Program-made: the position numbers and the translations under genes
Notes under the pieces: generated by a model
Database searches by the model: none
The model's input: the letters and a program-made list of their open reading frames with translations, nothing else
Told to the model about the DNA's origin: nothing
In this document: in pieces, positions 1,890 through 54,573 of the stretch
Layout: each line of letters begins with the position of its first letter
How positions within the stretch are numbered: position 1 is the stretch's first letter
Origin: Auanema rhodensis
Lineage: Eukaryota > Animalia > Nematoda
Direction of reading: 5' to 3'
NCBI GenBank assembly: GCA_964057225.1
Contig: OZ059894.1
Location: 12,090,001-12,154,000, forward strand
Length of the DNA stretch: 64,000 nt

Positions 1890-1891
<2 letters not shown>

Positions 1892-3220: not shown

Positions 3221-6200
3221 ATGGTTTATTGAATAACTAATGTTATGATACAATAAATAACCAATAAAAAAGAGCCCAGAATCGGGGAGACGGTATTACC
3301 AGTACAACTTAAAACAGCAAGTAATTAAAAAGTACATAATAAGACACATTGCCAACAGAGGCTAAAACGACTCAAGAGTCGGGGGAGTGGGTTAAAAAAA
3401 ATGAACAAAAAAATGAATATTAAAGCAGAACAATGAGAAATCAAGTGCCGCTATGATCAAACAATTTGAGTGCCTACGGCAATGATGTTAAAAATAAACA
3501 ACAAAATACATGTACCAATGAAGGTCAGAAAGAAAGAAACAAAAGACAAAAATAAGTAATACAAAAAGTAAATACATTACAATCAAATCACAAACAAGTC
3601 AATTGATAATTTCTTCTTCATACTGCCTTACACCAGAAACATGTTCCACGTAGATATTCCTGGCCCACTTGATGGTATCGGCGACGACGAGCTTCTCCAT
3701 TAGCCGGTTGTAGTGGCTGCTGATCTTGAGTGATCGGAGGGCTTGTACGTTGAGCGGGTCCATAGTTCCAAGCATTCCTACGACATACGCTTCTACACTA
3801 GTCTTATAACCAAGACATTGGTATTGGCTGGCTATGTCAGCATATTTCCTCTCCTTTATCATACGCGCGGCTATCATGGCTTGTCGGCGGTTTTCATAGC
3901 TCACTGTAACATCAACGATACTACAGTGTTTTGCGTCATGATCGACCACTACTATGTCAGGTCGGAGTGTACTATTAATGCCAGGAAGAGGCTGGTTAGT
4001 GTAAACTTCTCCGTTTTTAGGCTCTGGCAGGGCTTTGATAAGACGGTCCACGATGTTGTTGTGGCGGAGTTGGATTGCTCTCGTGTGAAAGTGGCAGTGT
4101 CCAAGAACATGTGCAGCAGTTTCGTTGGGGTAACTACACCTGCGGCACTGTTTGTTTCCTTCTCCGTGTCTTCTACAGCCATTGAGCTGGAGAGTATTAA
4201 GTCGAGCCTTGTGGATGAATCGCCAATCAGCAAACCGTATGAAATCTCCCTTCGCCATAAAGTGATTGGACGCTTTGTTGAGCATTGTGACATCAAAGAC
4301 TTTCCCTTGATCCGGTTTTTGAAGAAGGATCCGAAGGTCTTTCAGCCATAATGCACGTCGCAGGCTTCTGTGGCATAGTGAAGGTGTTAACAGTTGGTTG
4401 TTTAGATTGAGTTCTAAACCACTTTCGAGGCATGTCCAGTTAGCGTTGATGAGTTTCTTGAGTTGACGCATCGCTACTCTTACTCTAGTCCAGATGGAGG
4501 AAACATCAGATGTTTCGGTGTCGAAAATGCCATCAACGGAACCGTTGTAATATGCAGCTGTCTCATCGTTACTGGCTTGACGTTTAATCCTTTTTGATGC
4601 TACTTTTATTGAGTCTTGATGCGCAATATCAGCTACTACAAGATCAGATGACTTCAAAAGTTGGTAGGCATGAGTGACTTCACAGACGTCTGACAGGTGT
4701 TGGAGTCGAGAGAGACCAAGTCCGCCGTAGTTAGTTGGCAGGTAGATTGGTTCAGCACTGGCGTTTGGAGGATAGTGCATCCATCTACGGGCACAGCGTT
4801 TGAGTTCTTTGTCAAAGGCGACTAGTTTACTCTTTGGGACGTGGCCATTCGTCATATGAAAATTAAGGCAGGGCATCAGGAAGGTGCGTACTGCGTCAGC
4901 TTTCTGCCATTCAGCCAGTAAGGATTTGTCAATTTTTTCCAAGTGTTGACTCATGATATTCACTGTTGGAACCGCAGACTTATGTAAATGCATTCCAGTA
5001 GGGATTCCCAGGTGGGAGTAGCTGTCAAATTTGCTGAGAGCGGGTAGAAAGCAGCTCTGAAGCATGTATGAGGCTGTTGATATTTTCCCTTTGTCGATCG
5101 TCAAAGTGGCGCATTTCGCTGGTTTGAAGGTCAAGCCTGTGAAATTAGCCGCATTTGATGCTGCGTCCAACATTTTCTGTAGATCTTCTGATGATGAGGA
5201 GACCAGGGCAAGGTCATCGGCGTACGCTAGCACAGCGATGTTGTGATTGTGTAGCTTATAGCCTGTAGAGGTTTCCAAGATGGTTTTAATTAGAGGTTCA
5301 ATGGCAAGGTTGAACAGGATCGGAGATAGTGGGGATCCTTGTAACACACCTGCGTGAACTGGAATGGTCGAAGTGAGTCCGGAGCCTGTCTGGATTCTTG
5401 TAGAGGCATCTGTGTATAGAGCTCGTACTCGGGATATTGAGGCTTCAGCCATTCCTGACCATCTTAGAACGTCTAGCAGAGTTTCGTGTGGCAGCGATCC
5501 AAAAGCGTTTGCGAGATCAAGCCAAGCAATTGCAATTTTCTCACGTTTACGTTTAGCGTCTGCAATGGTACTTTGCAACAAAAAGTTGTGTTCCATGCAT
5601 CCAGCTTTGGCCACAAAGCCCTTTTGGGAGGGAGAAAGTCTTTTTTCTGCTCTTGCCCATGTTAGCAGTCGATGCGTAAGACAAGCTGAGTACGTCTTAC
5701 CAATTGTGCACGAAAGTGCTATTGGTCGCCAGTTGTTAATGTCAGCTTTATCACCTTTCTTATGGATGAGGACGGTGGTCGACTCTTTCCAGGAAAAAGG
5801 GATGTGTCCTAGCTTGTGTACGGTGTTAAATATCGCTGCTAATATGTGACCTCCTTGGTCAAATTTCTTCCAGTGCGAGTATCGAAGTCCATCAGCTCCT
5901 GGAGCCGTATCGCTGCAACGTCGTATGCGTTCCCAGACTTCCAAAGGGGTGAAAACACCTTCTAATGGGTCGGTACTAGTTGGCAAATCCGGTCTGGTGA
6001 CTGTGATGGGGAGGGCTGGGCCTTGACTGCTGTGAACAGAAAGGAAGTGTTTTTCAACATCTGCAGATGGTATGGTGCAGGTTTCACTTTGTTCTCCGAG
6101 CAGTTGTCGAAAGGCTTTCTTCTTGTTGGCCCTCCAAAGCTTCTGGATCTTCATCGCCTGGGTTTTTTGGTCTTCCTCAGGTTGTGTGTGTGGTCGGCGC

Positions 6201-6929
6201 CTTTGTCGGAAGTTGGGAACTTTGATCATAATGTCAAGAGACTTTCTGATTGTGTCTACCAACTCTTCCAGGACCTGCTCGAGCTCACTTTTGCACACTA
6301 CCTTTTTAATTCTATCCACCCAAATATTTTCAGAGTTTCTATTCGGATCAGGGTCGGCAAAAGATGGTTCTGTACTCGGAACCCTGATCTCGTTGAATAT
6401 TTCACTCTCTCGCGGAAGGGGGGAAACTTCGGCCTCTGGGGACAAGTCCAGAATTGGGGCCTCAAATAAGCGTACCGTTGATGGAGATCCTTGTTCCTGT
6501 CCACTGGATGATGTTTCCTCCATTGTACGCTCCTCCACGGGCGGGGTGGTCGTCCTTGTGCCTGGTGGGCGGGTGTTCCTGATCCTCCGCAATATAGGGC
6601 GGGAACTGGGCTCTCTCGGAGATAGAGGTGAGATCACCACAGTTTCCTCTATGATGCGGAGGCATCCTTCAGCTTTTTTCTGATGGCTTTTAACGGCCTT
6701 CAGATTGCTGGTGAGGCCACAGGCACGGCACTCAAATTCTACTCCGACCTCATGTTCTCTCCGAAGATGGCGGACGAGACCATTGTGGTCTGAGTAGGAT
6801 CGCGGAATAGGAGCGCAGATTGAACAAGAAAAAGGGCTCTGAAGAGGCACCTTTAGCTTGTAAAGCCCTTGCTCCATCTCTAGCAGATCTAAAGACTTAC
6901 GTAGTACAGTTGCAATATCGATTTAGCCA
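3221..6929 (-). mobile_element. Element A copy 1: full-length U2-targeting RLE non-LTR retrotransposon (Utopia-like, NeSL/R2 group)
   Basis: Single ZnF-RT-RLE ORF; 3' end fused to U2 nt 38; same orientation as U2; 52-nt unique leader; ~380-nt 3' UTR ending TCAATAAACCAT. Confidence 0.93.
3599..6877 (-). CDS. Retrotransposon protein: N-terminal zinc fingers, reverse transcriptase, CCHC knuckle, restriction-like endonuclease (1092 aa)
   Basis: CSIC..HLRREH and CRAC..H..C; APGADG, WRPIAL, QKGF, LDLANAFGS, GVLQGSPLSPILF, YADD; CRRC..ETAAHVLGHC, RHN, RPDIVV..VDVT..YE, KERKY. Confidence 0.96.
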   Translation of the reverse strand: MEQGLYKLKVPLQSPFSCSICAPIPRSYSDHNGLVRHLRREHEVGVEFECRACGLTSNLKAVKSHQKKAEGCLRIIEETVVISPLSPREPSSRPILRRIRNTRPPGTRTTTPPVEERTMEETSSSGQEQGSPSTVRLFEAPILDLSPEAEVSPLPRESEIFNEIRVPSTEPSFADPDPNRNSENIWVDRIKKVVCKSELEQVLEELVDTIRKSLDIMIKVPNFRQRRRPHTQPEEDQKTQAMKIQKLWRANKKKAFRQLLGEQSETCTIPSADVEKHFLSVHSSQGPALPITVTRPDLPTSTDPLEGVFTPLEVWERIRRCSDTAPGADGLRYSHWKKFDQGGHILAAIFNTVHKLGHIPFSWKESTTVLIHKKGDKADINNWRPIALSCTIGKTYSACLTHRLLTWARAEKRLSPSQKGFVAKAGCMEHNFLLQSTIADAKRKREKIAIAWLDLANAFGSLPHETLLDVLRWSGMAEASISRVRALYTDASTRIQTGSGLTSTIPVHAGVLQGSPLSPILFNLAIEPLIKTILETSTGYKLHNHNIAVLAYADDLALVSSSSEDLQKMLDAASNAANFTGLTFKPAKCATLTIDKGKISTASYMLQSCFLPALSKFDSYSHLGIPTGMHLHKSAVPTVNIMSQHLEKIDKSLLAEWQKADAVRTFLMPCLNFHMTNGHVPKSKLVAFDKELKRCARRWMHYPPNASAEPIYLPTNYGGLGLSRLQHLSDVCEVTHAYQLLKSSDLVVADIAHQDSIKVASKRIKRQASNDETAAYYNGSVDGIFDTETSDVSSIWTRVRVAMRQLKKLINANWTCLESGLELNLNNQLLTPSLCHRSLRRALWLKDLRILLQKPDQGKVFDVTMLNKASNHFMAKGDFIRFADWRFIHKARLNTLQLNGCRRHGEGNKQCRRCSYPNETAAHVLGHCHFHTRAIQLRHNNIVDRLIKALPEPKNGEVYTNQPLPGINSTLRPDIVVVDHDAKHCSIVDVTVSYENRRQAMIAARMIKERKYADIASQYQCLGYKTSVEAYVVGMLGTMDPLNVQALRSLKISSHYNRLMEKLVVADTIKWARNIYVEHVSGVRQYEEEIIN

Positions 6930-6987
6930 TTAACCTTATTGTGAACCAATGGAACACATATCGAAGGTTAATTCGATAAGAACGATT
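6930..6987 (-). other. Duplicated U2 segment (nt 39-96) forming the head of element A copy 1
   Basis: Exact match to U2. Confidence 0.92.
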
Positions 6988-7153
6988 TATTGAATAACTA
7001 ATGTTATGAAACAATAAATAACCAATAAAAAAGAGCCCAGAATCGGGGAGACGGTATTACCAGTACAACTTAAAACAGCAAGTGATTAAAAAGTACAAAA
7101 TAAAACACATTACCAACAGAGGCTAAAACGACTCAAGAGTCGGGGGAGTGGGT
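6988..7153 (-). mobile_element. 166-bp 5'-truncated element A (3' UTR end only) inserted at U2 nt 38/39 in the regenerated target
   Basis: Matches the 3' UTR haplotype of the copies at 37 kb and 50.7 kb; flanked by U2 nt 39 and nt 38 with no TSD. Confidence 0.92.
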
Positions 7154-7191
7154 ACTACACTTTGATCTTAGCCAAAAGGCCGAGAAGCGAT
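7154..7191 (-). pseudogene. U2 5' part (nt 1-38)
   Basis: Exact match to the U2 5' end. Confidence 0.9.
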
Positions 7192-9632: not shown

Positions 9633-10374
9633 TATTGACGTAGAGAATGTTTGTCCCGGAGGACTACAATTTAAAAAAATAATTACTGAAGCCGGAAGGC
9701 AGCGAGAAATAAAATGGATACTACCTGCACTGAGTGCGTCGTATCAAAAAAAAAAAGAGAATGATAGTCTTAAAGAAGAGAACAGCACATAAAGAAAAGT
9801 AGAACTTCCATCTGATGCTACGGGTTTAGAGGAATAGCTTATGTCAGATATCGGTTAAACATAAATGATTAGGGCAATTGCGGAACAAGGATAGTGTAAT
9901 TAACATTGTTTACAGAGTTCAGGTTCTGAAGCTACGGATAAAGAAGGGTTAGCTTGACAGATTGAAGTTAAAATGAACAACGTGGCATATTTCAGTACAG
10001 CACAATAGTAATAGCGAGACTACGGAAAAAAAAAAAAGCTCTGTTCTGGTCCTGGAACGGCGGCTTCGACGTCTTCTGGGTGCCACTGCGGTTTGAAGGG
10101 TCAGCTAGCTTAACAGTAGAACGGCGGCAAGGCGGAACAGGAGAAGAACATCGACGATCCTCCGGCTCGGCTGTCATAGTGTGCGACTTCTTGTTCATAA
10201 TGGTAGCGGTGTCCTCGTGCTTCTTCTTTCTCCACAAAAATTACTACACTATCTGAGCGGGAGAAGCCACAGATAACATAGGACCGCCTCAAGGCCTGGT
10301 AGATCAACCAGTGTTGCTTCAATCACCAAGTATTGCGGCCTGGGCCCTTGGATCAATTCACAACACCAGTATAG
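9633..10374 (-). mobile_element. Element B copy 1: 742-bp non-autonomous U2-targeted insertion (SINE-like or internally deleted retroelement)
   Basis: Same target site as A; ends TCAATAAA; no RT; preceded by U2 nt 1-79 (41-bp duplication); no extended similarity to A by eye. Confidence 0.85.
9992..10198 (-). CDS. Possible short ORF in element B (68 aa, MNKKSHTMTAEPEDRRCSSPVPP...), perhaps a remnant N-terminus of a parent element
   Basis: First ATG of the tracked ORF; GC-rich, Pro/Ser/Arg-rich; no domain recognised. Confidence 0.2.
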   Translation of the reverse strand: MNKKSHTMTAEPEDRRCSSPVPPCRRSTVKLADPSNRSGTQKTSKPPFQDQNRAFFFFRSLAITIVLY

Positions 10375-16628: not shown

Positions 16629-16747
16629 AGCTTACGACACCCGGGATTCCCAAGCCGTCTCCGATCCAAGTACTAACCGGGCCCAACGTTGCTTGACTTG
16701 CCAGATCGGACGGGATGGCGTACTTTCAACGTGGTATGGTCGTAAGC
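16629..16747 (-). rRNA. 5S rRNA (only copy in this shortened unit)
   Basis: Copy of 1225-1343; unit is 360 bp shorter. Confidence 0.96.
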
Positions 16748-16889
16748 AATGTTATATTCTTCATTATCAGTTATATCACTCTAAATCTTGTTGTTAATAG
16801 TTAGGACCACAAAGAAAACAACAGGAACAGTAACAATAACAAAAAAAATTTTTTTTTCACCTATGTGTCTAAAGGTTAGCCATGTATCC

Positions 16890-16935
<46 letters not shown>

Positions 16936-25556: not shown

Positions 25557-25705
25557 AATGGGCCGTTCCCGCCAGCAGTGCAAGAGCGGGTCGACCCGTG
25601 AGGTGGAGCTAGCAAGCCAGCATCTACCTCAAGTCTCAAAAATCGGTTAACCTTATTGTGAACCAATGGAACACATATCGAAGGTTAATTCGATAAGAAC
25701 GATTA
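25557..25705 (-). pseudogene. U2 3' part (nt 38-end); 5' part and promoter deleted
   Basis: U2 breaks at gattA|atggttt; no U2 5' end beyond the element. Confidence 0.9.
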
Positions 25706-28395
25706 ATGGTTTATTGAATAACTAATGTTATGATACAATAAATAACCAATAAAAAAGAGCCCAGAATCGGGGAGACGGTATTACCAGTACAACTTAAAAC
25801 AGCAAGTAATTAAAAAGTACATAATAAGACACATTGCCAACAGAGGCTAAAACGACTCAAGAGTCGGGGGAGTGGGTTAAAAAAAAATGAACAAAAAAAA
25901 TGAATATTAAAGCAGAACAATGAGAAATCAAGTGCCGCTATGATCAAACAATTTGAGTGCCTACGGCAATGATGTTAAAAATAAACAACAAAATACATGT
26001 ACCAATGAAGGTCAGAAAGAAAGAAACAAAAGACAAAATAAGTAATACAAAAAGTAAATACATTACAATCAAATCACAAACAAGTCAATTGATAATTTCT
26101 TCTTCATATTGCCTTACACCAGAAACATGTTCCACGTAGATATTCCTGGCCCACTTGATGGTATCGGCGACGACGAGCTTCTCCATTAGCCGGTTGTAGT
26201 GGCTGCTGATCTTGAGTGATCGGAGGGCTTGTCCGTTGAGCGGGTCCATAGTTCCAAGCATTCCTACGACATACGCTTCTACACTAGTCTTATAACCAAG
26301 ACATTGGTATTGGCTGGCTATGTCAGCATATTTCCTCTCCTTTATCATACGCGCGGCTATCATGGCTTGACGGCGGTTTTCATAGCTCACTGTAACATCA
26401 ACGATACTACAGTGTTTTGCGTCATGATCGACCACTACTATGTCAGGTCGGAGTGTACTATTAATGCCAGGAAGAGGCTGGTTAGTGTAAACTTCTCCGT
26501 TTTTAGGCTCTGGCAGGGCTTTGATAAGACGGTCCACGATGTTGTTGTGGCGGAGTTGGATTGCTCTCGTGTGAGAGTGGCAGTGTCCAAGAACATGTGC
26601 AGCAGTTTCGTTGGAGTAACTACACCTGCGGCACTGTTTGTTTCCTTCTCCGTGTCTTCTACAGCCATTGAGCTGGAGAGTATTGAGTCGAGCCTTGTGG
26701 ATGAATCGCCAATCAGCAAACCGTATGAAATCTCCCTTCGCCATAAAGTGATTGGACGCTTTGTTGAGCATTGTGACATCAAAGACTTTCCCTTGATCCG
26801 GTTTTTGAAGAAGGATCCGAAGGTCTTTCAGCCATAATGCACGTCGCAGGCTTCTGTGGCATAGTGAAGGTGTTAACAGTTGGTTGTTTAGATTGAGTTC
26901 TAAACCACTTTCGAGGCATGTCCAGTTAGCGTTGATGAGTTTCTTGAGTTGACGCATCGCTACTCTTACTCTAGTCCAGATGGAGGAAACATCAGATGTT
27001 TCGGTGTCGAAAATGCCATCAACGGAACCGTTGTAATATGCAGCTGTCTCATCGTTACTGGCTTGACGTTTAATCCTTTTTGATGCTACTTTTTTTGAGT
27101 CTTGATGCGCAATATCAGCTACTACAAGATCAGATGACTTCAAAAGTTGGTAGGCATGAGTGACTTCACAGACGTCTGACAGGTGTTGGAGTCGAGAGAG
27201 ACCAAGTCCGCCGTAGTTAGTTGGCAGGTAGATTGGTTCAGCACTGGCGTTTGGAGGATAGTGCATCCATCTACGGGCACAGCGTTTGAGTTCTTTGTCA
27301 AAGGCGACTAGTTTACTCTTTGGGACGTGGCCATTCGTCATATGAAAATTAAGGCAGGGCATCAGGAAGGTGCGTACTGCGTCAGCTTTCTGCCATTCAG
27401 CAAGTAAGGATTTGTCAATTTTTTCCAAGTGTTGACTCATAATATTCACTGTTGGAACCGCAGACTTATGTAAATGCATTCCAGTAGGGATTCCCAGGTG
27501 GGAGTAGCTGTCAAATTTGCTAAGAGCGGGTAGAGAGGAGCTCTGTAGCATGTATGAGGCTGTTGATATTTTCCCTTTGTCGATCGTCAAGGTGGCGCAT
27601 TTCGCTGGTTTGAAGGTCAAGCCTGTGAAATTAGCCGCATTTGATGCTGCGTCCAACATTTTCTGTAGATCTTCTGATGATGAGGAGACCAGGGCAAGGT
27701 CATCGGCGTACGCTAGCACAGCGATGTTGTGGTTGTGTAGCTTATAGCCTGTAGAGGTTTCCAAGATGGTTTTAATTAGAGGTTCAATGGCAAGGTTGAA
27801 CAGGATCGGAGATAGTGGGGATCCTTGTAACACACCTGCGTGAACTGGAATGGTCGAAGTGAGTCCGGAGCCTGTCTGGATTCTTGTAGAGGCATCTGTG
27901 TATAGAGCTCGTACTCGGGATATTGAGGCTTCAGCCATTCCTGACCATCTTAGAACGTCTAGCAGAGTTTCGTGTGGCAGCGATCCAAAAGCGTTTGCGA
28001 GATCAAGCCAAGCAATTGCAATTTTCTCACGTTTACGTTTAGCGTCCGCAATGGTACTTTGCAACATAAAGTTGTGTTCCATGCATCCAGCTTTGGCCAC
28101 AAAGCCCTTTTGGGAGGGAGAAAGTCTTTTTTCTGCTCTTGCCCATGTTAGCAGTCGATGCGTAAGACAAGCTGAGTACGTCTTACCAATTGTGCACGAA
28201 AGTGCTATTGGTCGCCAGTTGTTAATGTCAGCTTTATCACCTTTCTTATGGATGAGGACGGTGGTCGACTCTTTCCAGGAAAAAGGGATGTGTCCTAGCT
28301 TGTGTACGGTGTTAAATATCGCTGCTAATATGTGACCTCCTTGGTCAAATTTCTTCCAGTGCGAGTATCGAAGTCCATCAGCTCCTGGAGCCGTA
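25706..28395 (-). mobile_element. Element A copy 2: 5'-truncated (~2.7 kb), diverged haplotype, with ~1.24 kb upstream host deletion
   Basis: Breaks in the codons for DTAPGADG (ggagccgta|cgt|ttctaaccc) and joins the spacer at the equivalent of position ~1988. Confidence 0.92.
26085..28395 (-). pseudogene. 5'-truncated RT-RLE reading frame (tracked as 26085-28100, 671 aa); lacks zinc fingers and native start
   Basis: About 99% identical to the C-terminal part of the 1092-aa protein. Confidence 0.88.
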
Positions 28396-35733: not shown

Positions 35734-36913
35734 ACAGTAAAAAGTCCAATCAAGAGAGAAATTTTTTCAACACATAGTTGTTTTTTTTTTAAATATCATT
35801 GTTTTTCCTCATAACTCGGTTTAAACTCGTTCTAACCCGTTGAAATACGTCTAGAAAGTCTTTATAACATGCATATGTATGATAGAACTTCATATTTATT
35901 GTAATAGAAAATTTTATTTTCAGACGTCTTGGTTAACAATGATATGTTTTACCCCCTTATAATTTTTATCATAATGTTCCTTATACGGAACGCTCAATGA
36001 AACTTGCTTCCAGAAAAATTTCTTTCTATTTTTTCTTCATATGTACGTAGATACTATAGAGAACTATGATAGAAAACTTTAACATTCACGAAATCATCAT
36101 TTCTCATTACGCTACGGAGGTTTAAAAAGCTGTGTTTTACCTTATAATAGACCGGAAAACCCTTGTGTTAAAACTGGACCGTTTTTACACATATAAAAAT
36201 GTCCCGTATTCGGGACCCTAATGTAACTTTTGATTCCCTATATTTTTTTTCATGAAATTTACAATCTACTGTAGAAAGAAGAATTATTTTTATAAAAACT
36301 GTAAATTTTTGAAAAATGAAAACAAAACGAAAACAAAAACAACTTTTTTTTGAACATTTTCTCACACAAGGGTCCCCCCTTACCTACTTTTTTTCTCATT
36401 ACTCGTTTCAACCTCATCCGATCACTCTGCAAACATGTTTAATCGTTCTAACTTGTTGAAATACGTCTTAAAAGTCTAAACAACATGCATATGCATAATA
36501 GAAACCACCCGAATAGGCCCCCACGCACTAAACGAGATATATACATTACCAGTATAGTAATAGAACACATATTGAAGATTAATTCGATAAGAACAATTTA
36601 TTGACGTAGAGAATGTTTGTTCCGAAAAACTACAATATTAAACTATAAAAGTAACAAAAGCGTAGAGGCAGCAAAGACATGAATAAACATAAATGTAAAT
36701 ACAGAATTACCAGGTAGTACATAAGTATGACAAAAAATTATAAGAAAGCCATGAAAATAGAAGGTTTGTGAACAAATGAGAGGTACATCTTTGATCGTAT
36801 AGTCATTTCTAAACCGTTCGTATGCTGCAGCATCGTCATAAGCGTCACTCAAGTTGAATTTCCATGTGTACTATACGATTTTCATTCTTATTGTTACATT
36901 CTTTCCCTGAGGG

Positions 36914-37062
36914 AATGGGCCGTTCCCGCCAGCAGTGCAAGAGCGGGTCGACCCGTGAGGTGGAGCTAGCAAGCCAGCATCTACCTCAAGTCTCAAAAAT
37001 CGGTTAACCTTATTGTGAACCAATGGAACACATATCGAAGGTTAATTCGATAAGAACGATTA
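36914..37062 (-). pseudogene. U2 3' part downstream of element A copy 3
   Basis: Breaks at U2 nt 38. Confidence 0.9.
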
Positions 37063-40000
37063 ATGGTTTATTGGATAACTAATGTTATGAAACAATAAAT
37101 AACCAATAAAAAAGAGCCCAGAATCGGGGAGACGGTATTACCAGTACAACTTAAAACAACAAGTGATTAAAAAGTACAAAATAAAACACATTACCAACAG
37201 AGGCTAAAACGACTCAAGAGTCGGGGGAGTGGGTTAAAAAAAGTAATGAATAACAAAAAAAATGAATAATAAAGCAGAACAGTGAAAAGTAAATATCAAG
37301 TGCCGCTATGATCAAACAATTTGAGTGCCTACGGCAATGGTGTTAAAAATAAACAACAAAATACATGTACCAATGAAGGTCAGAAAGAGAGAAAGAAAAA
37401 AGACAAAAATAAGTAATACAAAAAGTAAAAAATATATTACAATCAAATCACAAACAAGTCAATGGATAATTTCTTCTTCATACTGCCTTACACCAGAAAC
37501 ATGTTCCACGTAGATATTCCTGGCCCACTTGATGGTATCGGCGACGACGAGCTTCTCCATTAGCCGGTTGTAGTGGCTGCTGATCTTGAGTGATCGGAGG
37601 GCTTGTACGTTGAGCGGGTCCATAGTTCCAAGCATTCCTACAACATACGCTTCTACACTAGTCTTATAACCAAGACATTGGTATTGGCTGGCTATGTCAG
37701 CATATTTCCTCTCCTTTATCATACGCGCGGCTATCATGGCTTGTCGGCGGTTTTCATAGCTCACTGTAACATCAACGATACTACAGTGTTTTGCGTCATG
37801 ATCGACCACTACTATGTCAGGTCGGAGTGTACTATTAATGCCAGGAAGAGGCTGGTTAGTGTAAACTTCTCCGTTTTTAGGCTCTGGCAGGGCTTTGATA
37901 AGACGGTCCACGATGTTGTTGTGGCGGAGTTGGATTGCTCTCGTGTGAAAGTGGCAGTGTCCAAGAACATGTGCAGCAGTTTCGTTGGGGTAACTACACC
38001 TGCGGCACTGTTTGTTTCCTTCTCCGTGTCTTCTACAGCCATTGAGCTGGAGAGTATTAAGTCGAGCCTTGTGGATGAATCGCCAATCAGCAAACCGTAT
38101 GAAATCTCCCTTCGCCATAAAGTGATTGGACGCTTTGTTGAGCATTGTGACATCAAAGACTTTCCCTTGATCCGGTTTTTGAAGAAGGATCCGAAGGTCT
38201 TTCAGCCATAATGCACGTCGCAGGCTTCTGTGGCATAGTGAAGGTGTTAACAGTTGGTTGTTTAGATTGAGTTCTAAACCACTTTCGAGGCATGTCCAGT
38301 TAGCGTTGATGAGTTTCTTGAGTTGACGCATCGCTACTCTTACTCTAGTCCAGATGGAGGAAACATCAGATGTTTCGGTGTCGAAAATGCCATCAACGGA
38401 ACCGTTGTAATATGCAGCTGTCTCATCGTTACTGGCTTGACGTTTAATCCTTTTTGATGCTACTTTTATTGAGTCTTGATGCGCAATATCAGCTACTACA
38501 AGATCAGATGACTTCAAAAGTTGGTAGGCATGAGTGACTTCACAGACGTCTGACAGGTGTTGGAGTCGAGAGAGACCAAGTCCGCCGTAGTTAGTTGGCA
38601 GGTAGATTGGTTCAGCACTGGCGTTTGGAGGATAGTGCATCCATCTACGGGCACAGCGTTTGAGTTCTTTGTCAAAGGCGACTAGTTTACTCTTTGGGAC
38701 GTGGCCATTCGTCATATGAAAATTAAGGCAGGGCATCAGGAAGGTGCGTACTGCGTCAGCTTTCTGCCATTCAGCCAGTAAGGATTTGTCAATTTTTTCC
38801 AAGTGTTGACTCATGATATTCACTGTTGGAACCGCAGACTTATGTAAATGCATTCCAGTAGGGATTCCCAGGTGGGAGTAGCTGTCAAATTTGCTGAGAG
38901 CGGGTAGAAAGCAGCTCTGAAGCATGTATGAGGCTGTTGATATTTTCCCTTTGTCGATCGTCAAAGTGGCGCATTTCGCTGGTTTGAAGGTCAAGCCTGT
39001 GAAATTAGCCGCATTTGATGCTGCGTCCAACATTTTCTGTAGATCTTCTGATGATGAGGAGACCAGGGCAAGGTCATCGGCGTACGCTAGCACAGCGATG
39101 TTGTGATTGTGTAGCTTATAGCCTGTAGAGGTTTCCAAGATGGTTTTAATTAGAGGTTCAATGGCAAGGTTGAACAGGATCGGAGATAGTGGGGATCCTT
39201 GTAACACACCTGCGTGAACTGGAATGGTCGAAGTGAGTCCGGAGCCTGTCTGGATTCTTGTAGAGGCATCTGTGTATAGAGCTCGTACTCGGGATATTGA
39301 GGCTTCAGCCATTCCTGACCATCTTAGAACGTCTAGCAGAGTTTCGTGTGGCAGCGATCCAAAAGCGTTTGCGAGATCAAGCCAAGCAATTGCAATTTTC
39401 TCACGTTTACGTTTAGCGTCTGCAATGGTACTTTGCAACAAAAAGTTGTGTTCCATGCATCCAGCTTTGGCCACAAAGCCCTTTTGGGAGGGAGAAAGTC
39501 TTTTTTCTGCTCTTGCCCATGTTAGCAGTCGATGCGTAAGACAAGCTGAGTACGTCTTACCAATTGTGCACGAAAGTGCTATTGGTCGCCAGTTGTTAAT
39601 GTCAGCTTTATCACCTTTCTTATGGATGAGGACGGTGGTCGACTCTTTCCAGGAAAAAGGGATGTGTCCTAGCTTGTGTACGGTGTTAAATATCGCTGCT
39701 AATATGTGACCTCCTTGGTCAAATTTCTTCCAGTGCGAGTATCGAAGTCCATCAGCTCCTGGAGCCGTATCGCTGCAACGTCGTATGCGTTCCCAGACTT
39801 CCAAAGGGGTGAAAACACCTTCTAATGGGTCGGTACTAGTTGGCAAATCCGGTCTGGTGACTGTGATGGGGAGGGCTGGGCCTTGACTGCTGTGAACAGA
39901 AAGGAAGTGTTTTTCAACATCTGCAGATGGTATGGTGCAGGTTTCACTTTGTTCTCCGAGCAGTTGTCGAAAGGCTTTCTTCTTGTTGGCCCTCCAAAGC

Positions 40001-40789
40001 TTCTGGATCTTCATCGCCTGGGTTTTTTGGTCTTCCTCAGGTTGTGTGTGTGGTCGGCGCCTTTGTCGGAAGTTGGGAACTTTGATCATAATGTCAAGAG
40101 ACTTTCTGATTGTGTCTACCAACTCTTCCAGGACCTGCTCGAGCTCACTTTTGCACACTACCTTTTTAATTCTATCCACCCAAATATTTTCAGAGTTTCT
40201 ATTCGGATCAGGGTCGGCAAAAGATGGTTCTGTACTCGGAACCCTGATCTCGTTGAATATTTCACTCTCTCGCGGAAGGGGGGAAACTTCGGCCTCTGGG
40301 GACAAGTCCAGAATTGGGGCCTCAAACAAGCGTACCGTTGATGGAGATCCTTGTTCCTGTCCACTGGATGATGTTTCCTCCATTGTACGCTCCTCCACGG
40401 GCGGGGTGGTCGTCCTTGTGCCTGGTGGGCGGGTGTTCCTGATCCTCCGCAATATAGGGCGGGAACTGGGCTCTCTCGGAGATAGAGGTGAGATCACCAC
40501 AGTTTCCTCTATGATGCGGAGGCATCCTTCAGCTTTTTTCTGATGGCTTTTAACGGCCTTCAGATTGCTGGTGAGGCCACAGGCACGGCACTCAAATTCT
40601 ACTCCGACCTCATGTTCTCTCCGAAGATGGCGGACGAGACCATTGTGGTCTGAGTAGGATCGCGGAATAGGAGCGCAGATTGAACAAGAAAAAGGGCTCT
40701 GAAGAGGCACCTTTAGCTTGTAAAGCCCTTGCTCCATCTCTAGCAGATCTAAAGACTTACGTAGTACAGTTGCAATATCGATTTAGCCA
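37063..40789 (-). mobile_element. Element A copy 3: full-length Utopia-like non-LTR retrotransposon
   Basis: Intact ORF; same junctions as copy 1. Confidence 0.93.
37459..40737 (-). CDS. Retrotransposon ZnF-RT-RLE protein (1092 aa)
   Basis: Same motifs as 3599-6877; differs only at the last residue (H vs N). Confidence 0.96.
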   Translation of the reverse strand: MEQGLYKLKVPLQSPFSCSICAPIPRSYSDHNGLVRHLRREHEVGVEFECRACGLTSNLKAVKSHQKKAEGCLRIIEETVVISPLSPREPSSRPILRRIRNTRPPGTRTTTPPVEERTMEETSSSGQEQGSPSTVRLFEAPILDLSPEAEVSPLPRESEIFNEIRVPSTEPSFADPDPNRNSENIWVDRIKKVVCKSELEQVLEELVDTIRKSLDIMIKVPNFRQRRRPHTQPEEDQKTQAMKIQKLWRANKKKAFRQLLGEQSETCTIPSADVEKHFLSVHSSQGPALPITVTRPDLPTSTDPLEGVFTPLEVWERIRRCSDTAPGADGLRYSHWKKFDQGGHILAAIFNTVHKLGHIPFSWKESTTVLIHKKGDKADINNWRPIALSCTIGKTYSACLTHRLLTWARAEKRLSPSQKGFVAKAGCMEHNFLLQSTIADAKRKREKIAIAWLDLANAFGSLPHETLLDVLRWSGMAEASISRVRALYTDASTRIQTGSGLTSTIPVHAGVLQGSPLSPILFNLAIEPLIKTILETSTGYKLHNHNIAVLAYADDLALVSSSSEDLQKMLDAASNAANFTGLTFKPAKCATLTIDKGKISTASYMLQSCFLPALSKFDSYSHLGIPTGMHLHKSAVPTVNIMSQHLEKIDKSLLAEWQKADAVRTFLMPCLNFHMTNGHVPKSKLVAFDKELKRCARRWMHYPPNASAEPIYLPTNYGGLGLSRLQHLSDVCEVTHAYQLLKSSDLVVADIAHQDSIKVASKRIKRQASNDETAAYYNGSVDGIFDTETSDVSSIWTRVRVAMRQLKKLINANWTCLESGLELNLNNQLLTPSLCHRSLRRALWLKDLRILLQKPDQGKVFDVTMLNKASNHFMAKGDFIRFADWRFIHKARLNTLQLNGCRRHGEGNKQCRRCSYPNETAAHVLGHCHFHTRAIQLRHNNIVDRLIKALPEPKNGEVYTNQPLPGINSTLRPDIVVVDHDAKHCSIVDVTVSYENRRQAMIAARMIKERKYADIASQYQCLGYKTSVEAYVVGMLGTMDPLNVQALRSLKISSHYNRLMEKLVVADTIKWARNIYVEHVSGVRQYEEEIIH

Positions 40790-40885
40790 TTAACCTTATT
40801 GTGAACCAATGGAACACATATCGAAGGTTAATTCGATAAGAACGATTACTACACTTTGATCTTAGCCAAAAGGCCGAGAAGCGAT
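40790..40885 (-). pseudogene. U2 nt 1-96 head fused to element A (nt 38-96 duplicated)
   Basis: Exact match to U2; normal upstream flank retained. Confidence 0.92.
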
Positions 40886-50601: not shown

Positions 50602-50750
50602 AATGGGCCGTTCCCGCCAGCAGTGCAAGAGCGGGTCGACCCGTGAGGTGGAGCTAGCAAGCCAGCATCTACCTCAAGTCTCAAAAATCGGTTAACCTTA
50701 TTGTGAACCAATGGAACACATATCGAAGGTTAATTCGATAAGAACGATTA
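50602..50750 (-). pseudogene. U2 3' part downstream of element A copy 4
   Basis: Breaks at U2 nt 38. Confidence 0.9.
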
Positions 50751-53700
50751 ATGGTTTATTGAATAACTAATGTTATGAAACAATAAATAACCAATAAAAA
50801 AGAGCCCAGAATCGGGGAGACGGTATTACCAGTACAACTTAAAACAGCAAGTGATTAAAAAGTACAAAATAAAACACATTACCAACAGAGGCTAAAACGA
50901 CTCAAGAGTCGGGGGAGTGGGTTAAAAAAAGTAATGAATAACAAAAAAAATGAATAATAAAGCAGAACAGTGAAAAGTAAATATCAAGTGCCGCTATGAT
51001 CAAACAATTTGAGTGCCTACGGCAATGGTGTTAAAAATAAACAACAAAATACATGTACCAATGAAGGTCAGAAAGAGAGAAAGAAAAAAGACAAAAATAA
51101 GTAATACAAAAAGTAAAAAATATATTACAATCAAATCACAAACAAGTCAATGGATAATTTCTTCTTCATACTGCCTTACACCAGAAACATGTTCCACGTA
51201 GATATTCCTGGCCCACTTGATGGTATCGGCGACGACGAGCTTCTCCATTAGCCGGTTGTAGTGGCTGCTGATCTTGAGTGATCGGAGGGCTTGTACGTTG
51301 AGCGGGTCCATAGTTCCAAGCATTCCTACGACATACGCTTCTACACTAGTCTTATAACCAAGACATTGGTATTGGCTGGCTATGTCAGCATATTTCCTCT
51401 CCTTTATCATACGCGCGGCTATCATGGCTTGTCGGCGGTTTTCATAGCTCACTGTAACATCAACGATACTACAGTGTTTTGCGTCATGATCGACCACTAC
51501 TATGTCAGGTCGGAGTGTACTATTAATGCCAGGAAGAGGCTGGTTAGTGTAAACTTCTCCGTTTTTAGGCTCTGGCAGGGCTTTGATAAGACGGTCCACG
51601 ATGTTGTTGTGGCGGAGTTGGATTGCTCTCGTGTGAAAGTGGCAGTGTCCAAGAACATGTGCAGCAGTTTCGTTGGGGTAACTACACCTGCGGCACTGTT
51701 TGTTTCCTTCTCCGTGTCTTCTACAGCCATTGAGCTGGAGAGTATTAAGTCGAGCCTTGTGGATGAATCGCCAATCAGCAAACCGTATGAAATCTCCCTT
51801 CGCCATAAAGTGATTGGACGCTTTGTTGAGCATTGTGACATCAAAGACTTTCCCTTGATCCGGTTTTTGAAGAAGGATCCGAAGGTCTTTCAGCCATAAT
51901 GCACGTCGCAGGCTTCTGTGGCATAGTGAAGGTGTTAACAGTTGGTTGTTTAGATTGAGTTCTAAACCACTTTCGAGGCATGTCCAGTTAGCGTTGATGA
52001 GTTTCTTGAGTTGACGCATCGCTACTCTTACTCTAGTCCAGATGGAGGAAACATCAGATGTTTCGGTGTCGAAAATGCCATCAACGGAACCGTTGTAATA
52101 TGCAGCTGTCTCATCGTTACTGGCTTGACGTTTAATCCTTTTTGATGCTACTTTTATTGAGTCTTGATGCGCAATATCAGCTACTACAAGATCAGATGAC
52201 TTCAAAAGTTGGTAGGCATGAGTGACTTCACAGACGTCTGACAGGTGTTGGAGTCGAGAGAGACCAAGTCCGCCGTAGTTGGTTGGCAGGTAGATTGGTT
52301 CAGCACTGGCGTTTGGAGGATAGTGCATCCATCTACGGGCACAGCGTTTGAGTTCTTTGTCAAAGGCGACTAGTTTACTCTTTGGGACGTGGCCATTCGT
52401 CATATGAAAATTAAGGCAGGGCATCAGGAAGGTGCGTACTGCGTCAGCTTTCTGCCATTCAGCCAGTAAGGATTTGTCAATTTTTTCCAAGTGTTGACTC
52501 ATGATATTCACTGTTGGAACCGCAGACTTATGTAAATGCATTCCAGTAGGGATTCCCAGGTGGGAGTAGCTGTCAAATTTGCTGAGAGCGGGTAGAAAGC
52601 AGCTCTGAAGCATGTATGAGGCTGTTGATATTTTCCCTTTGTCGATCGTCAAAGTGGCGCATTTCGCTGGTTTGAAGGTCAAGCCTGTGAAATTAGCCGC
52701 ATTTGATGCTGCGTCCAACATTTTCTGTAGATCTTCTGATGATGAGGAGACCAGGGCAAGGTCATCGGCGTACGCTAGCACAGCGATGTTGTGATTGTGT
52801 AGCTTATAGCCTGTAGAGGTTTCCAAGATGGTTTTAATTAGAGGTTCAATGGCAAGGTTGAACAGGATCGGAGATAGTGGGGATCCTTGTAACACACCTG
52901 CGTGAACTGGAATGGTCGAAGTGAGTCCGGAGCCTGTCTGGATTCTTGTAGAGGCATCTGTGTATAGAGCTCGTACTCGGGATATTGAGGCTTCAGCCAT
53001 TCCTGACCATCTTAGAACGTCTAGCAGAGTTTCGTGTGGCAGCGATCCAAAAGCGTTTGCGAGATCAAGCCAAGCAATTGCAATTTTCTCACGTTTACGT
53101 TTAGCGTCTGCAATGGTACTTTGCAACAAAAAGTTGTGTTCCATGCATCCAGCTTTGGCCACAAAGCCCTTTTGGGAGGGAGAAAGTCTTTTTTCTGCTC
53201 TTGCCCATGTTAGCAGTCGATGCGTAAGACAAGCTGAGTACGTCTTACCAATTGTGCACGAAAGTGCTATTGGTCGCCAGTTGTTAATGTCAGCTTTATC
53301 ACCTTTCTTATGGATGAGGACGGTGGTCGACTCTTTCCAGGAAAAAGGGATGTGTCCTAGCTTGTGTACGGTGTTAAATATCGCTGCTAATATGTGACCT
53401 CCTTGGTCAAATTTCTTCCAGTGCGAGTATCGAAGTCCATCAGCTCCTGGAGCCGTATCGCTGCAACGTCGTATGCGTTCCCAGACTTCCAAAGGGGTGA
53501 AAACACCTTCTAATGGGTCGGTACTAGTTGGCAAATCCGGTCTGGTGACTGTGATGGGGAGGGCTGGGCCTTGACTGCTGTGAACAGAAAGGAAGTGTTT
53601 TTCAACATCTGCAGATGGTATGGTGCAGGTTTCACTTTGTTCTCCGAGCAGTTGTCGAAAGGCTTTCTTCTTGTTGGCCCTCCAAAGCTTCTGGATCTTC

Positions 53701-54477
53701 ATCGCCTGGGTTTTTTGGTCTTCCTCAGGTTGTGTGTGTGGTCGGCGCCTTTGTCGGAAGTTGGGAACTTTGATCATAATGTCAAGAGACTTTCTGATTG
53801 TGTCTATCAACTCTTCCAGGACCTGCTCGAGCTCACTTTTGCACACTACCTTTTTAATTCTATCCACCCAAATATTTTCAGAGTTTCTATTCGGATCAGG
53901 GTCGGCAAAAGATGGTTCTGTACTCGGAACCCTGATCTCGTTGAATATTTCACTCTCTCGCGGAAGGGGGGAAACTTCGGCCTCTGGGGACAAGTCCAGA
54001 ATTGGGGCCTCAAACAAGCGTACCGTTGATGGAGATCCTTGTTCCTGTCCACTGGATGATGTTTCCTCCATTGTACGCTCCTCCACGGGCGGGGTGGTCG
54101 TCCTTGTGCCTGGTGGGCGGGTGTTCCTGATCCTCCGCAATATAGGGCGGGAACTGGGCTCTCTCGGAGATAGAGGTGAGATCACCACAGTTTCCTCTAT
54201 GATGCGGAGGCATCCTTCAGCTTTTTTCTGATGGCTTTTAACGGCCTTCAGATTGCTGGTGAGGCCACAGGCACGGCACTCAAATTCTACTCCGACCTCA
54301 TGTTCTCTCCGAAGATGGCGGACGAGACCATTGTGGTCTGAGTAGGATCGCGGAATAGGAGCGCAGATTGAACAAGAAAAAGGGCTCTGAAGAGGCACCT
54401 TTAGCTTGTAAAGCCCTTGCTCCATCTCTAGCAGATCTAAAGACTTACGTAGTACAGTTGCAATATCGATTTAGCCA
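50751..54477 (-). mobile_element. Element A copy 4: full-length Utopia-like non-LTR retrotransposon
   Basis: Intact ORF; same junctions as copies 1 and 3. Confidence 0.93.
51147..54425 (-). CDS. Retrotransposon ZnF-RT-RLE protein (1092 aa)
   Basis: Same motifs; one V>I change versus copy 3. Confidence 0.96.
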   Translation of the reverse strand: MEQGLYKLKVPLQSPFSCSICAPIPRSYSDHNGLVRHLRREHEVGVEFECRACGLTSNLKAVKSHQKKAEGCLRIIEETVVISPLSPREPSSRPILRRIRNTRPPGTRTTTPPVEERTMEETSSSGQEQGSPSTVRLFEAPILDLSPEAEVSPLPRESEIFNEIRVPSTEPSFADPDPNRNSENIWVDRIKKVVCKSELEQVLEELIDTIRKSLDIMIKVPNFRQRRRPHTQPEEDQKTQAMKIQKLWRANKKKAFRQLLGEQSETCTIPSADVEKHFLSVHSSQGPALPITVTRPDLPTSTDPLEGVFTPLEVWERIRRCSDTAPGADGLRYSHWKKFDQGGHILAAIFNTVHKLGHIPFSWKESTTVLIHKKGDKADINNWRPIALSCTIGKTYSACLTHRLLTWARAEKRLSPSQKGFVAKAGCMEHNFLLQSTIADAKRKREKIAIAWLDLANAFGSLPHETLLDVLRWSGMAEASISRVRALYTDASTRIQTGSGLTSTIPVHAGVLQGSPLSPILFNLAIEPLIKTILETSTGYKLHNHNIAVLAYADDLALVSSSSEDLQKMLDAASNAANFTGLTFKPAKCATLTIDKGKISTASYMLQSCFLPALSKFDSYSHLGIPTGMHLHKSAVPTVNIMSQHLEKIDKSLLAEWQKADAVRTFLMPCLNFHMTNGHVPKSKLVAFDKELKRCARRWMHYPPNASAEPIYLPTNYGGLGLSRLQHLSDVCEVTHAYQLLKSSDLVVADIAHQDSIKVASKRIKRQASNDETAAYYNGSVDGIFDTETSDVSSIWTRVRVAMRQLKKLINANWTCLESGLELNLNNQLLTPSLCHRSLRRALWLKDLRILLQKPDQGKVFDVTMLNKASNHFMAKGDFIRFADWRFIHKARLNTLQLNGCRRHGEGNKQCRRCSYPNETAAHVLGHCHFHTRAIQLRHNNIVDRLIKALPEPKNGEVYTNQPLPGINSTLRPDIVVVDHDAKHCSIVDVTVSYENRRQAMIAARMIKERKYADIASQYQCLGYKTSVEAYVVGMLGTMDPLNVQALRSLKISSHYNRLMEKLVVADTIKWARNIYVEHVSGVRQYEEEIIH

Positions 54478-54573
54478 TTAACCTTATTGTGAACCAATGG
54501 AACACATATCGAAGGTTAATTCGATAAGAACGATTACTACACTTTGATCTTAGCCAAAAGGCCGAGAAGCGAT
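54478..54573 (-). pseudogene. U2 nt 1-96 head fused to element A
   Basis: Exact match to U2. Confidence 0.92.

What the first reader, a model, noticed from the sequence alone, without database searches (positions are those of the whole stretch)
40790..40885. Full-length elements carry a 59-bp U2 duplication that regenerates their own target (U2-headed retrotransposon)
Seen: the 3' junction is at U2 nt 38, but the 5' junction of all three full-length copies (6930, 40790, 54478) is at U2 nt 96, so nt 38-96 flank both sides. The 166-bp truncated copy has no duplication, and element B has a different fixed length (to nt 79). Inference: this is not an endonuclease-stagger TSD. The U2 segment is part of the element RNA, transcribed from the host U2 promoter as a U2(1-96)-element chimera. 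Its cDNA could anneal to the upstream target for precise 5' joining, and each full insertion restores an insertable site.
Basis: partly seen in the sequence, partly recalled or inferred. Interest (0 to 1): 0.88.

Follow-up and report, generated by a model that had tools for sequence, protein, structure and literature searches.

The report
U2-headed Utopia retrotransposon, inherited pseudo-duplication
A jumping gene that lands only inside this roundworm's U2 snRNA genes carries the first 96 bases of U2 on its own RNA, so the 58-59-base repeat around each complete copy is inherited and not made by a staggered cut, and it rebuilds the landing site.

Summary

- **Setting.** The window is part of a roughly 1.3-Mb U2 + 5S tandem array. 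A 3.7-kb Utopia-type retrotransposon (RT plus restriction-like endonuclease) sits at U2 nt 38|39.
- **Duplication.** All three full copies in the window have U2 1-96 upstream and U2 38-190 downstream.
- **Genome-wide.** Every one of the 47 junctions at U2 nt 96 joins element nt 1. About 28 copies that lack the 5' end never abut nt 96. Three of them abut nt 38/39 exactly.
- **RNA start.** All eight U2 5' ends in the genome with a non-canonical upstream sequence are heads of this element. They start at U2 +1 or +2 and are joined to non-promoter DNA, as expected if a cDNA had been copied to the cap site.
- **Stacking.** Seven element|head|element stacks show that the rebuilt site is reused.

No RNA data could be obtained, and the top-strand cut site is inferred, not mapped.

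The principle was already proposed for R2, including an earwig R2 with an inherited 22-bp duplication of downstream target. I therefore rate this a new variant of a known kind. Two earlier follow-ups in this scan reached the same reading on other parts of the same array.

The parts
40790..40885 (-). U2 nt 1-96 'head' of the full-length copy (the finding). Nt 39-96 (40790-40847) repeat the downstream target.
   Evidence: BLAST of the intact U2 against the window, 100% identity; cmscan U2 hit
37063..40789 (-). Element A, full length, 3727 bp: 52-nt 5' UTR, ORF, ~395-nt 3' UTR ending ..CAATAAACCAT(T)
37459..40737 (-). ORF of 1092 aa: N-terminal zinc fingers, RT (YADD at 552), CCHC knuckle at 911, RLE motif RPD..D..K from 972
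36910..37062 (-). Downstream target half, U2 nt 38-190
54478..54573 (-). U2 nt 1-96 head of the second full-length copy
50751..54477 (-). Element A, full length (5 differences from the copy at 37063-40789), followed by U2 38-190 at 50598-50750
3221..6929 (-). Element A, 3709-bp subfamily, followed by U2 38-190 at 3068-3220
6930..6987 (-). U2 nt 39-96, the remainder of that copy's head after a second insertion split it
6988..7152 (-). 165-bp 5'-truncated A copy inserted at nt 38|39 of the head. No duplication, no deletion. Its 3' end is ..CAATA|AATCG.
7153..7191 (-). U2 nt 1-38/39 upstream of the truncated copy
25706..28395 (-). 5'-truncated A copy (nt ~1022-3727) joined to spacer position 1080. 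About 1.24 kb of spacer plus U2 1-37 are missing. U2 38-190 lies at 25553-25705.
9633..10374 (-). Element B (742 bp, non-coding) with a U2 1-79 head at 10375-10453 and U2 39-190 at 9481-9632. An identical copy is at 12895-13636.

Best explanation
Element A is a Utopia-type non-LTR retrotransposon. It has a single ORF with zinc fingers, a reverse transcriptase, a CCHC knuckle and a PD-(D/E)xK restriction-like endonuclease. It inserts in sense orientation at nt 38|39 of U2 snRNA genes.

Its template RNA starts at the host U2 transcription start, so it reads U2(1-96) + element. No ribozyme trims it.

Proposed cycle:
1. The bottom strand is nicked at 38|39 and reverse transcription is primed from the nick.
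2. A complete cDNA ends with the complement of U2 1-96.
3. The top strand is broken at or next to the same position (blunt to within about 1 nt).
4. The part of the cDNA complementary to nt 1-38 pairs with the upstream half of the target.
5. Second-strand synthesis then copies nt 39-96 plus the element.

The result is U2 1-96 | element | U2 39-190.

The 58-59-nt repeat is therefore inherited with the element (a pseudo-TSD). It appears only when the cDNA is complete, and it rebuilds an intact 38|39 site that later copies use.

If homology pairing fails, the complete cDNA is end-joined to a distant upstream break. That leaves a head starting at U2 +1 next to foreign DNA.

Shown here: the anatomy, the all-or-none link between the duplication and a complete 5' end, the cDNA ends at U2 +1/+2, and the stacking. 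Inferred: the use of the U2 promoter, the pairing step and the position of the top-strand break.
For: 1. Anatomy.
- All three window copies and all 30 fetched copies have U2 39-96 directly 5' of element nt 1.

2. Genome-wide junctions at nt 96.
- U2 nt 83-96 is followed only by plain U2 or by 'TG'. There are 47 such 'TG' sites.
- All 47 continue as element nt 1-18.

3. Truncated copies.
- 74 element 3' ends were counted against 47 5' ends.
- Pairing the coordinates gives 41 full-length copies, about 5 internally deleted ones and about 28 that lack the 5' end.
- None of the truncated copies abuts nt 96.
- Only three junctions in the genome have U2 nt 38/39 next to something other than U2. All three are truncated A copies: the 165-bp window copy, one truncated at nt 379, and one of ~1.4 kb at C1:10967097.

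4. Non-canonical U2 5' ends.
- All eight in the genome (base -1 not T, or base +1 not A) lie exactly 96 nt upstream of an element nt 1 (compared with 25).
- In the fetched copies the upstream partner is spacer position 310, 285 (plus a T run), 844 or 1025. Two further copies (L020, L023) carry ~40-bp promoter deletions that end at U2 nt 1 and nt 3-5.
- These six junction types fall in five of seven sequence clusters of the element.

5. Reuse of the rebuilt site.
- Seven A|59 nt|A stacks.
- A/B stacks in which A has a 1-96 head upstream of a B head that ends at nt 79.

6. No ribozyme or other Rfam family in the element at E <= 1.

7. Conservation of the leader.
- The 58-nt head and the 52-nt 5' UTR have no variable column in 30 copies.
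- The ORF has 2.6% variable columns and the 3' UTR 19.8%.
- The invariance of the head therefore need not mean it is copied afresh from the target.

8. Precedent.
- R2 RNAs that keep upstream 28S sequence give uniform 5' junctions.
- Earwig R2 carries an inherited 22-bp duplication of downstream 28S (PMC3774820).
Against: - There is no RNA evidence.
- The copies are not independent, because unequal crossing-over amplifies array units. L016 and L017 are one event, and several promoter-context copies are near-identical.
I only know that they abut neither nt 96 nor nt 38-40. Partial duplications ending between nt 41 and 95 were excluded only in the 264 kb I hold.
- One copy (L026) has a head that starts at nt 38/39 after 14 nt of filler and spacer DNA. 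This model does not predict that.
- The head never differs from the host U2, so no sequence marker tracks its inheritance.
- snRNA-type Pol II promoters are not known to make long translatable RNAs.
Confidence: 0.8

Rival explanations
1. True target-site duplication. The endonuclease nicks the bottom strand at 38|39 and the top strand at 96|97, and fill-in of the 58-nt stagger duplicates nt 39-96 at every insertion. This is the reading Kojima and Jurka 2015 gave for the 20-bp Utopia TSDs, and the one given for the 126-bp TSD of rotifer R9.
For: - The length is fixed and the two repeat copies are 100% identical.
- Duplication length differs between Utopia lineages: 0 and 20 bp in the literature and about 21 nt in a scorpion relative.
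- Stacks could also form by repeated insertion at X|U2 39 junctions.
Against: - None of about 28 truncated copies abuts nt 96, and three abut nt 38/39 exactly.
- Heads that begin at U2 +1/+2 next to non-promoter DNA cannot be target DNA.
- An A with a 1-96 head sits upstream of B heads that end at nt 79. That fits this model only if every stack grew from the downstream side.
Confidence: 0.04
2. Hybrid model. The RNA does carry U2 1-96, but the enzyme also cuts the top strand at 96|97. The cDNA then pairs with the 39-96 overhang, and both the RNA and the stagger contribute to the repeat.
For: It is compatible with the heads that start at U2 +1 and with the uniform full-length junctions.
Against: Truncated cDNAs should then often join at or near nt 96. 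None does, and three join exactly at 38/39. An extra assumption is needed for no gain in explanation.
Confidence: 0.08
3. One odd ancestral insertion, later multiplied only by unequal crossing-over and segmental duplication of the array. The fixed junction would then say nothing about mechanism.
For: - The array is extremely homogeneous. All U2 copies are identical.
- It contains inverted and tandem segmental duplicates, such as L016/L017 and L021/L022.
Against: - There are at least 10 different 5' contexts.
- There are seven sequence clusters with up to ~1.8% divergence and different lengths.
- Insertions occur inside heads of A and of B.
- There are truncated copies at the exact site.
- More than 40 ORFs are intact.
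- The upstream deletions all end at U2 +1.
Confidence: 0.04

Closest known systems
Utopia (U2 snRNA gene-targeting RLE non-LTR retrotransposons; Kojima & Jurka 2015, PMC4640811)
   Same: - Single ORF with N-terminal zinc fingers, RT, CCHC and a PD-(D/E)xK endonuclease.
- Sense insertion at the same U2 position, with downstream U2 starting at nt 39. The match is within the 1-nt ambiguity and a 1-nt numbering shift caused by an extra A in this U2.
- Tandem insertions are known in Nasonia.
- Nematode families are known.
   Different: - The reported flanking changes are 0 bp (arthropods), 20 bp (reptiles) or a deletion (oomycetes), and they are read as different top-strand cut sites.
- Here the repeat is 58-59 bp, is limited to complete copies, and is shown by cDNA-end footprints to be RNA-borne.
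- The paper does not discuss the promoter or transcript.
R2 co-transcript and heteroduplex model, including earwig R2 (Eickbush, Burke & Eickbush 2013, PMC3774820)
   Same: - Template RNA keeps upstream target sequence.
- The cDNA pairs with the upstream target and gives uniform 5' junctions.
- Junction oddities are carried in the RNA and propagated.
- Earwig R2 has a 22-bp duplication of downstream 28S at the 5' end of all copies.
   Different: - In R2, Pol I read-through is trimmed by an HDV-like ribozyme. Here no ribozyme was found and the RNA 5' end is the U2 start site of a Pol II snRNA gene.
- The head is longer (96 nt, of which 58 are downstream target).
- The rebuilt site is demonstrably reused.
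R9 of bdelloid rotifers (Gladyshev & Arkhipova 2009, Gene 448:145; cited in PMC5035012 and PMC13580325; not read here)
   Same: A site-specific RLE element flanked by an unusually long direct repeat of its target (126 bp, by its title).
   Different: It is described as a duplication generated upon insertion. Whether it is restricted to full-length copies is not known to me. Its target is 28S.
Keno (Tx1 clade; Kojima & Fujiwara 2004, as cited in PMC4640811)
   Same: The same U2 insertion site.
   Different: It has an APE-type endonuclease and belongs to a different clade. It is not related by protein.
SINEU (Kojima 2015, PMC4494074)
   Same: Retroelements whose 5' head is U1- or U2-derived. Transcription from an upstream promoter has been discussed for them.
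   Different: - They are dispersed, non-autonomous and found in crocodilians.
- The head is thought to be gained by template switching onto snRNA.
- They are not inserted in U2 genes, and the head does not rebuild a target.

Membership tests
Utopia | Single ORF with RT followed by a CCHC motif and a PD-(D/E)xK restriction-like endonuclease, and N-terminal zinc finger(s) | tested here: met
   - Pfam RVT_1, E = 5e-28.
- R2 protein structures match residues 237-772, E = 1e-67.
- CCHC at residue 911 and RPD..D..K from residue 972; C2H2-like motifs near the N-terminus.
Utopia | Sense insertion in U2 snRNA genes with the 3' flank starting at U2 nt 39 | tested here: met
   - In the 33 full-length copies held (30 fetched, 3 in the window), the 3' flank starts at U2 nt 36-40, mostly 38/39.
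- All element matches found lie in the U2-5S array.
Utopia | RT groups with Utopia in a phylogeny | tested here: inconclusive
   - No Repbase sequences were available and no tree was built.
- The best named relatives (38-44% identity) are scorpion proteins. Two scorpion copies (L033, L034) are flanked by U2 from the same site.
- Turtle and nematode proteins follow. R2 proteins are more distant.
R2-type co-transcript with heteroduplex 5' joining | Template RNA carries target sequence upstream of the element | tested here: met
   This rests on genomic footprints only: eight heads start at U2 +1/+2 next to non-promoter DNA. No RNA data.
R2-type co-transcript with heteroduplex 5' joining | The 5' end is set by a self-cleaving HDV-like ribozyme | tested here: not met
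   No ribozyme family at the gathering threshold in the window, and none at E <= 1 in 37000-40852. The cDNA ends lie at the U2 start site.
Endonuclease-stagger target-site duplication | The duplication is present whatever the length of the cDNA, so 5'-truncated copies have it too | tested here: not met
   47 of 47 complete 5' ends have it, and none of about 28 truncated copies abuts nt 96. Three truncated copies abut nt 38/39.
SINEU | Short, non-autonomous, dispersed element with an snRNA-derived head | tested here: not met
   The element is autonomous (3.7 kb, with an intact ORF) and confined to U2 genes.

The most novel reading that the evidence does not exclude
The U2(1-96) leader may be a working part of the element, not just a passenger. 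A U2 gene's Pol II snRNA promoter would make a chimeric RNA that lacks the Sm site, because the head stops a few nt before it. Such an RNA would escape snRNP maturation and could serve as both mRNA and template.

The 'TSDs' reported across Utopia would then all be inherited heads of this kind: 20 bp in reptiles, about 21 nt in the scorpion relative, and 41 nt for element B. That would be a general strategy in which a site-specific element carries and re-plants its own landing site.
Probability: 0.3. Interest if true: 0.75.

Novelty: new variant of a known kind. Interest (0 to 1): 0.6.

Why it matters
- **Separating two things usually confused.** It separates a duplication made by the enzyme from one carried by the RNA. 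It does so from sequence alone, using truncated copies and mis-joined copies as natural controls.
- **Reinterpreting earlier work.** It suggests that the variable 'TSDs' used to infer top-strand cut sites in Utopia may not report cut sites at all.
- **An unusual promoter.** It points to an snRNA-gene Pol II promoter driving a 3.8-kb coding RNA, which would be unusual.
- **Target requirement.** It shows that the element needs no more than U2 nt 1-79 as a target.
- **Relevance to engineering.** The design resembles the homology arms now added to R2 templates for precise 5' joining, in a natural element with a 96-nt arm.

Tried and rejected
- **RNA evidence.** The later Rfam scan was run beside them, on 37000-40852.
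- **Fetching the whole array.** The genome-wide tallies therefore rest on pattern searches. About 23 truncated junctions were not read.
- **Closest protein relatives.** They are 55-56% identical and come from metagenome contigs L031 and L032. Both contigs end inside the element and show no flanks.
- **Ribozyme at the 5' end.** None found.
- **Similarity between A and B.** None beyond the terminal CAATA. The argument 'one enzyme, two head lengths' therefore stays weak, because I could not show which enzyme moves B. The protein search listed only A copies among the scored candidates.
- **Invariant head as evidence for fresh copying from the target.** Rejected, because the element's own 52-nt 5' UTR is just as invariant.
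- **Leader fold.** The predicted fold of the chimeric leader is only modestly better than shuffles (z = -2.7). I did not use it as evidence.

Full report
**What is there.** cmscan finds 14 intact U2 snRNA genes, 37 5S rRNA genes and 10 partial U2 hits in the window, all on the minus strand, in a unit of about 2477 bp. BLAST of the intact U2 against the window resolves the partial hits into fragments with sharp ends: 1-96, 38/39-96, 1-79, 1-39 and 38/39-190. The window is G000:C1:12090001-12154000, in a 181-Mb genome. Earlier notes of this scan call the host a rhabditid nematode. I did not test this, but nematode proteins are among the named relatives of the ORF.

**The element.** Between U2 1-96 and U2 38-190 lies a 3727-bp element in U2 orientation, with a 1092-aa ORF (40737..37459). 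The ORF has these features:
- N-terminal C2H2-type fingers
- an RT domain (Pfam RVT_1, E = 5e-28; YADD at residue 552)
- a CCHC knuckle at residue 911
- an RPD..D..K restriction-like endonuclease motif from residue 972

Solved R2 proteins match residues 237-772 at E = 1e-67. The downstream U2 begins at nt 38/39, the site that defines Utopia and Keno (PMC4640811). This U2 has one extra A upstream of the site, so its nt 38|39 corresponds to the published position within the 1-nt junction ambiguity. The closest named relatives (38-44% identity) are scorpion proteins. Two scorpion loci that I fetched are flanked by U2 from the same site, and there stacked elements are separated by about 21 nt of U2. 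I file the element as a Utopia family member. The formal RT tree was not done.

**The observation.** All three full-length window copies have the stated structure. The repeat is 58 nt, or 59 with an ambiguous T. The short copy is 165 bp and has neither a duplication nor a deletion. Element B (742 bp, two identical copies) has a head ending at nt 79. A fourth A copy at 25706-28395 is truncated at about nt 1022. It is joined to spacer position 1080, with about 1.24 kb of upstream target missing.

The element occurs only in the U2-5S array on contig C1, between 10.93 and 12.22 Mb. I fetched 30 full-length copies with 1.5-kb flanks, and all carry U2 39-96 directly before element nt 1. Pattern searches of the whole genome then gave these tallies:

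| Pattern searched | Result |
|---|---|
| U2 nt 83-96 followed by something other than plain U2 or 'TG' | none in the array; four stray hits on other contigs |
| U2 nt 96 followed by 'TG' | 47 sites, all continuing as element nt 1-18 |
| Element 3' ends | 74 |
| U2 nt 38 or 39 followed by non-U2 | 3 sites, all truncated A copies |

Pairing the coordinates gives 41 full-length copies, about 5 with internal deletions and about 28 without a 5' end. The three truncated copies that abut nt 38/39 are the 165-bp window copy, one truncated at nt 379, and one of about 1.4 kb at C1:10967097. As raw counts, 47 of 47 complete 5' ends carry the duplication against 0 of 27 truncated copies (taking the 74 - 47 difference), Fisher p = 9e-21. 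That p overstates the evidence, because array units are amplified by recombination.

**A natural 5' RACE.** In 18 of the 30 fetched copies the head is preceded by the normal promoter. Six are stacked behind another A or B. Eight have foreign sequence upstream of the head:

| Locus | Upstream partner | Head starts at |
|---|---|---|
| L012 | spacer position 310, 1-3 nt before a fossil B-like\|U2-like junction present in every unit | nt 1 |
| L016 / L017 (one event, inverted duplicate) | spacer 285 plus a T run | nt 2 |
| L025 | spacer 844 | nt 1 |
| L030 | spacer 1025 | nt 2 |
| L020 | promoter with a ~40-bp deletion | nt 1 |
| L023 | promoter with a ~40-bp deletion | nt 3-5 |
| L026 | spacer 896 plus 14 nt of filler | nt 38/39 |

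I then searched the genome for every U2 5' end whose base -1 is not T or whose base +1 is not A. There are eight. Each lies exactly 96 nt upstream of an element nt 1, and none belongs to an uninterrupted U2 gene (against 25). L020 and L023 escape these two patterns, so they add two further junction types. In the window only 3 of about 20 U2 5' ends head an A copy.

In the fetched loci the junction types fall in five of seven sequence clusters of the element. Independent deletions that all stop at the transcription start are what is expected if a cDNA was copied to the 5' end of an RNA starting at U2 +1 and then end-joined upstream. In these copies the whole head, including nt 39-96, must therefore have come from RNA. 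By parsimony the same holds for the others.

**Top-strand break.** Three truncated copies sit between intact U2 1-38/39 and U2 39 onward, with at most 4 unassigned nt. In those events the top strand was broken at the bottom-strand nick to within about 1 nt, as in arthropod Utopia without a TSD. The other truncated copies that I could read carry large upstream deletions (L028). None of this fits a fixed cut at 96|97.

**Reuse of the rebuilt site.** Seven A|59 nt|A stacks exist. Four of them have a truncated, dead-on-arrival copy upstream of a full one. That is the order expected if new copies enter the head of a resident one. A and B also enter each other's heads, for example U2 1-96|A|38-79|B''|39-96|A|38-190 in L012 and L029. 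If stacks grow from the upstream side, A entered targets that end at nt 79. U2 nt 1-79 would then be enough for recognition, and nt 80-96 of the new head cannot be target-derived. Taken alone, the stacks could also be read as growth from the downstream side by a staggered cut. It is the truncated copies and the +1 footprints that decide.

**An objection considered.** The head never differs from host U2, although the subfamilies differ by up to ~1.8%. This could suggest that the head is copied afresh from each target. However, the element's own 52-nt 5' UTR also has no variable column in 30 copies, against 2.6% of columns in the ORF and 19.8% in the 3' UTR. The whole leader is therefore conserved, whether by selection or by conversion, and the objection does not discriminate between the models.

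**What is not shown.**
- No RNA data could be obtained.
- Use of the U2 promoter is inferred from where the cDNAs end.
- The pairing step is taken from the R2 model.
- No ribozyme was found, which fits an untrimmed 5' end.
- L026 remains unexplained.

**Comparison with what is known.** Kojima and Jurka 2015 describe Utopia TSDs of 0 or 20 bp, or deletions. They read these as different top-strand cut sites, and the word 'promoter' does not occur in their paper. Eickbush et al. 2013 show three relevant things for R2:
- R2 RNAs that keep upstream 28S sequence give uniform 5' junctions.
- Junction variants can be carried in the RNA and propagated.
- All earwig R2 copies carry 22 bp of downstream 28S at their 5' end.

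The principle is therefore established. What is new here:
- It applies to a Utopia element.
- A Pol II snRNA gene start site serves as the RNA 5' end, without a ribozyme.
- The head is long (96 nt, 58 of them downstream target).
- Sequence-only proof comes from truncated and mis-joined copies.
- The rebuilt site is demonstrably reused.

Two earlier follow-ups of this scan (s1-429772, s1-409952) reached the same reading on other stretches of the same array. They are not independent evidence.

**Verdict.** This is a new variant of a known kind, with interest 0.6.

Noticed in passing
G000 contigs C1 (13.3-18.8 Mb), C3, C4; e.g. C1:18483831(-)/18498244(+), C3:7454417/7454472/7454527: The 16-mer U2 nt 64-79 followed by a non-G occurs 249 times in the genome, mostly outside the U2-5S array, with a few recurrent continuations. 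Many sites form inverted pairs about 14.4 kb apart or 55-bp tandem steps. U2 nt 1-21 is not dispersed in this way. A partial U2 piece therefore seems to be built into another repeat family, possibly the ends of a ~14-kb element or B-related elements. I could not fetch any of them.
   Followed up: partly
window 246-331, and the same place in every unit (spacer positions ~262-351): Every repeat unit carries a fossil junction: about 50 bp resembling the 3' end of element B (84%), ending in CAATA, followed by a U2-like nt 39-78 stretch (90-94%). Two upstream deletions next to A heads start at or near this fossil site (spacer 310 and 285), so it may still be cut as a pseudo-target.
   Followed up: partly
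window 40738-40847 and 30 loci L001-L030: The U2 39-96 head plus the 52-nt 5' UTR (110 nt) show no variable position in 30 copies. The 3' UTR varies at 19.8% of columns and the ORF at 2.6%. The leader looks strongly constrained.
   Followed up: partly
window 37063-37075, 6988-6995, 9633-9640; L018, L021-L023: The 3' junction has small variants: ..CAATAAACCATT|AATCG (most A copies), ..CAATAAACCAGT|AATCG (L018), ..CAATAAAC|CATCG (L021-23), and ..CAATA|AATCG (the 165-bp A copy, all B variants and the fossil). A and B share only this terminal CAATA.
   Followed up: no
L026:5211-5290 (G000:C1 ~11388946-11389020): One full-length A copy has a head that starts at U2 nt 38/39, not at nt 1. It is preceded by 14 A/T-rich filler bases and spacer position 896. 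No model considered here explains it.
   Followed up: no
L033:2640-2680 and 6820-6860; L034:1870-1900, 2590-2625, 6905-6935: In the scorpion Centruroides sculpturatus, related elements are stacked with about 21 nt of U2, starting at the same site, between the 3' end of one and the leader of the next. In L033 this piece differs by one base from the copy on the 3' side. This looks like the same head architecture at a shorter length.
   Followed up: partly
window 40798-40820 (U2 nt 66-89): The U2 head contains an AUG at nt 66 that opens a 7-codon reading frame ending in UAA at nt 87-89, about 60 nt before the element's start codon. It would act as an upstream ORF in the chimeric RNA.
   Followed up: no
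window 15997-18112; L006, L011, L016/L017: The array is not uniform. One unit is 2115 bp and carries a single 5S gene. Elsewhere there are inverted segmental duplications and spacer deletions unrelated to U2 +1 (L006: spacer 1045-2213 missing).
   Followed up: no
L005, L012, L020, L025, L028, L029: Element B exists in at least four structural variants of about 740-860 bp. They share roughly the first 115 and last 125 nt and all have a head ending at U2 nt 79. One variant starts with an extra AACAATCGATA and occurs 12 times in the array.
   Followed up: partly
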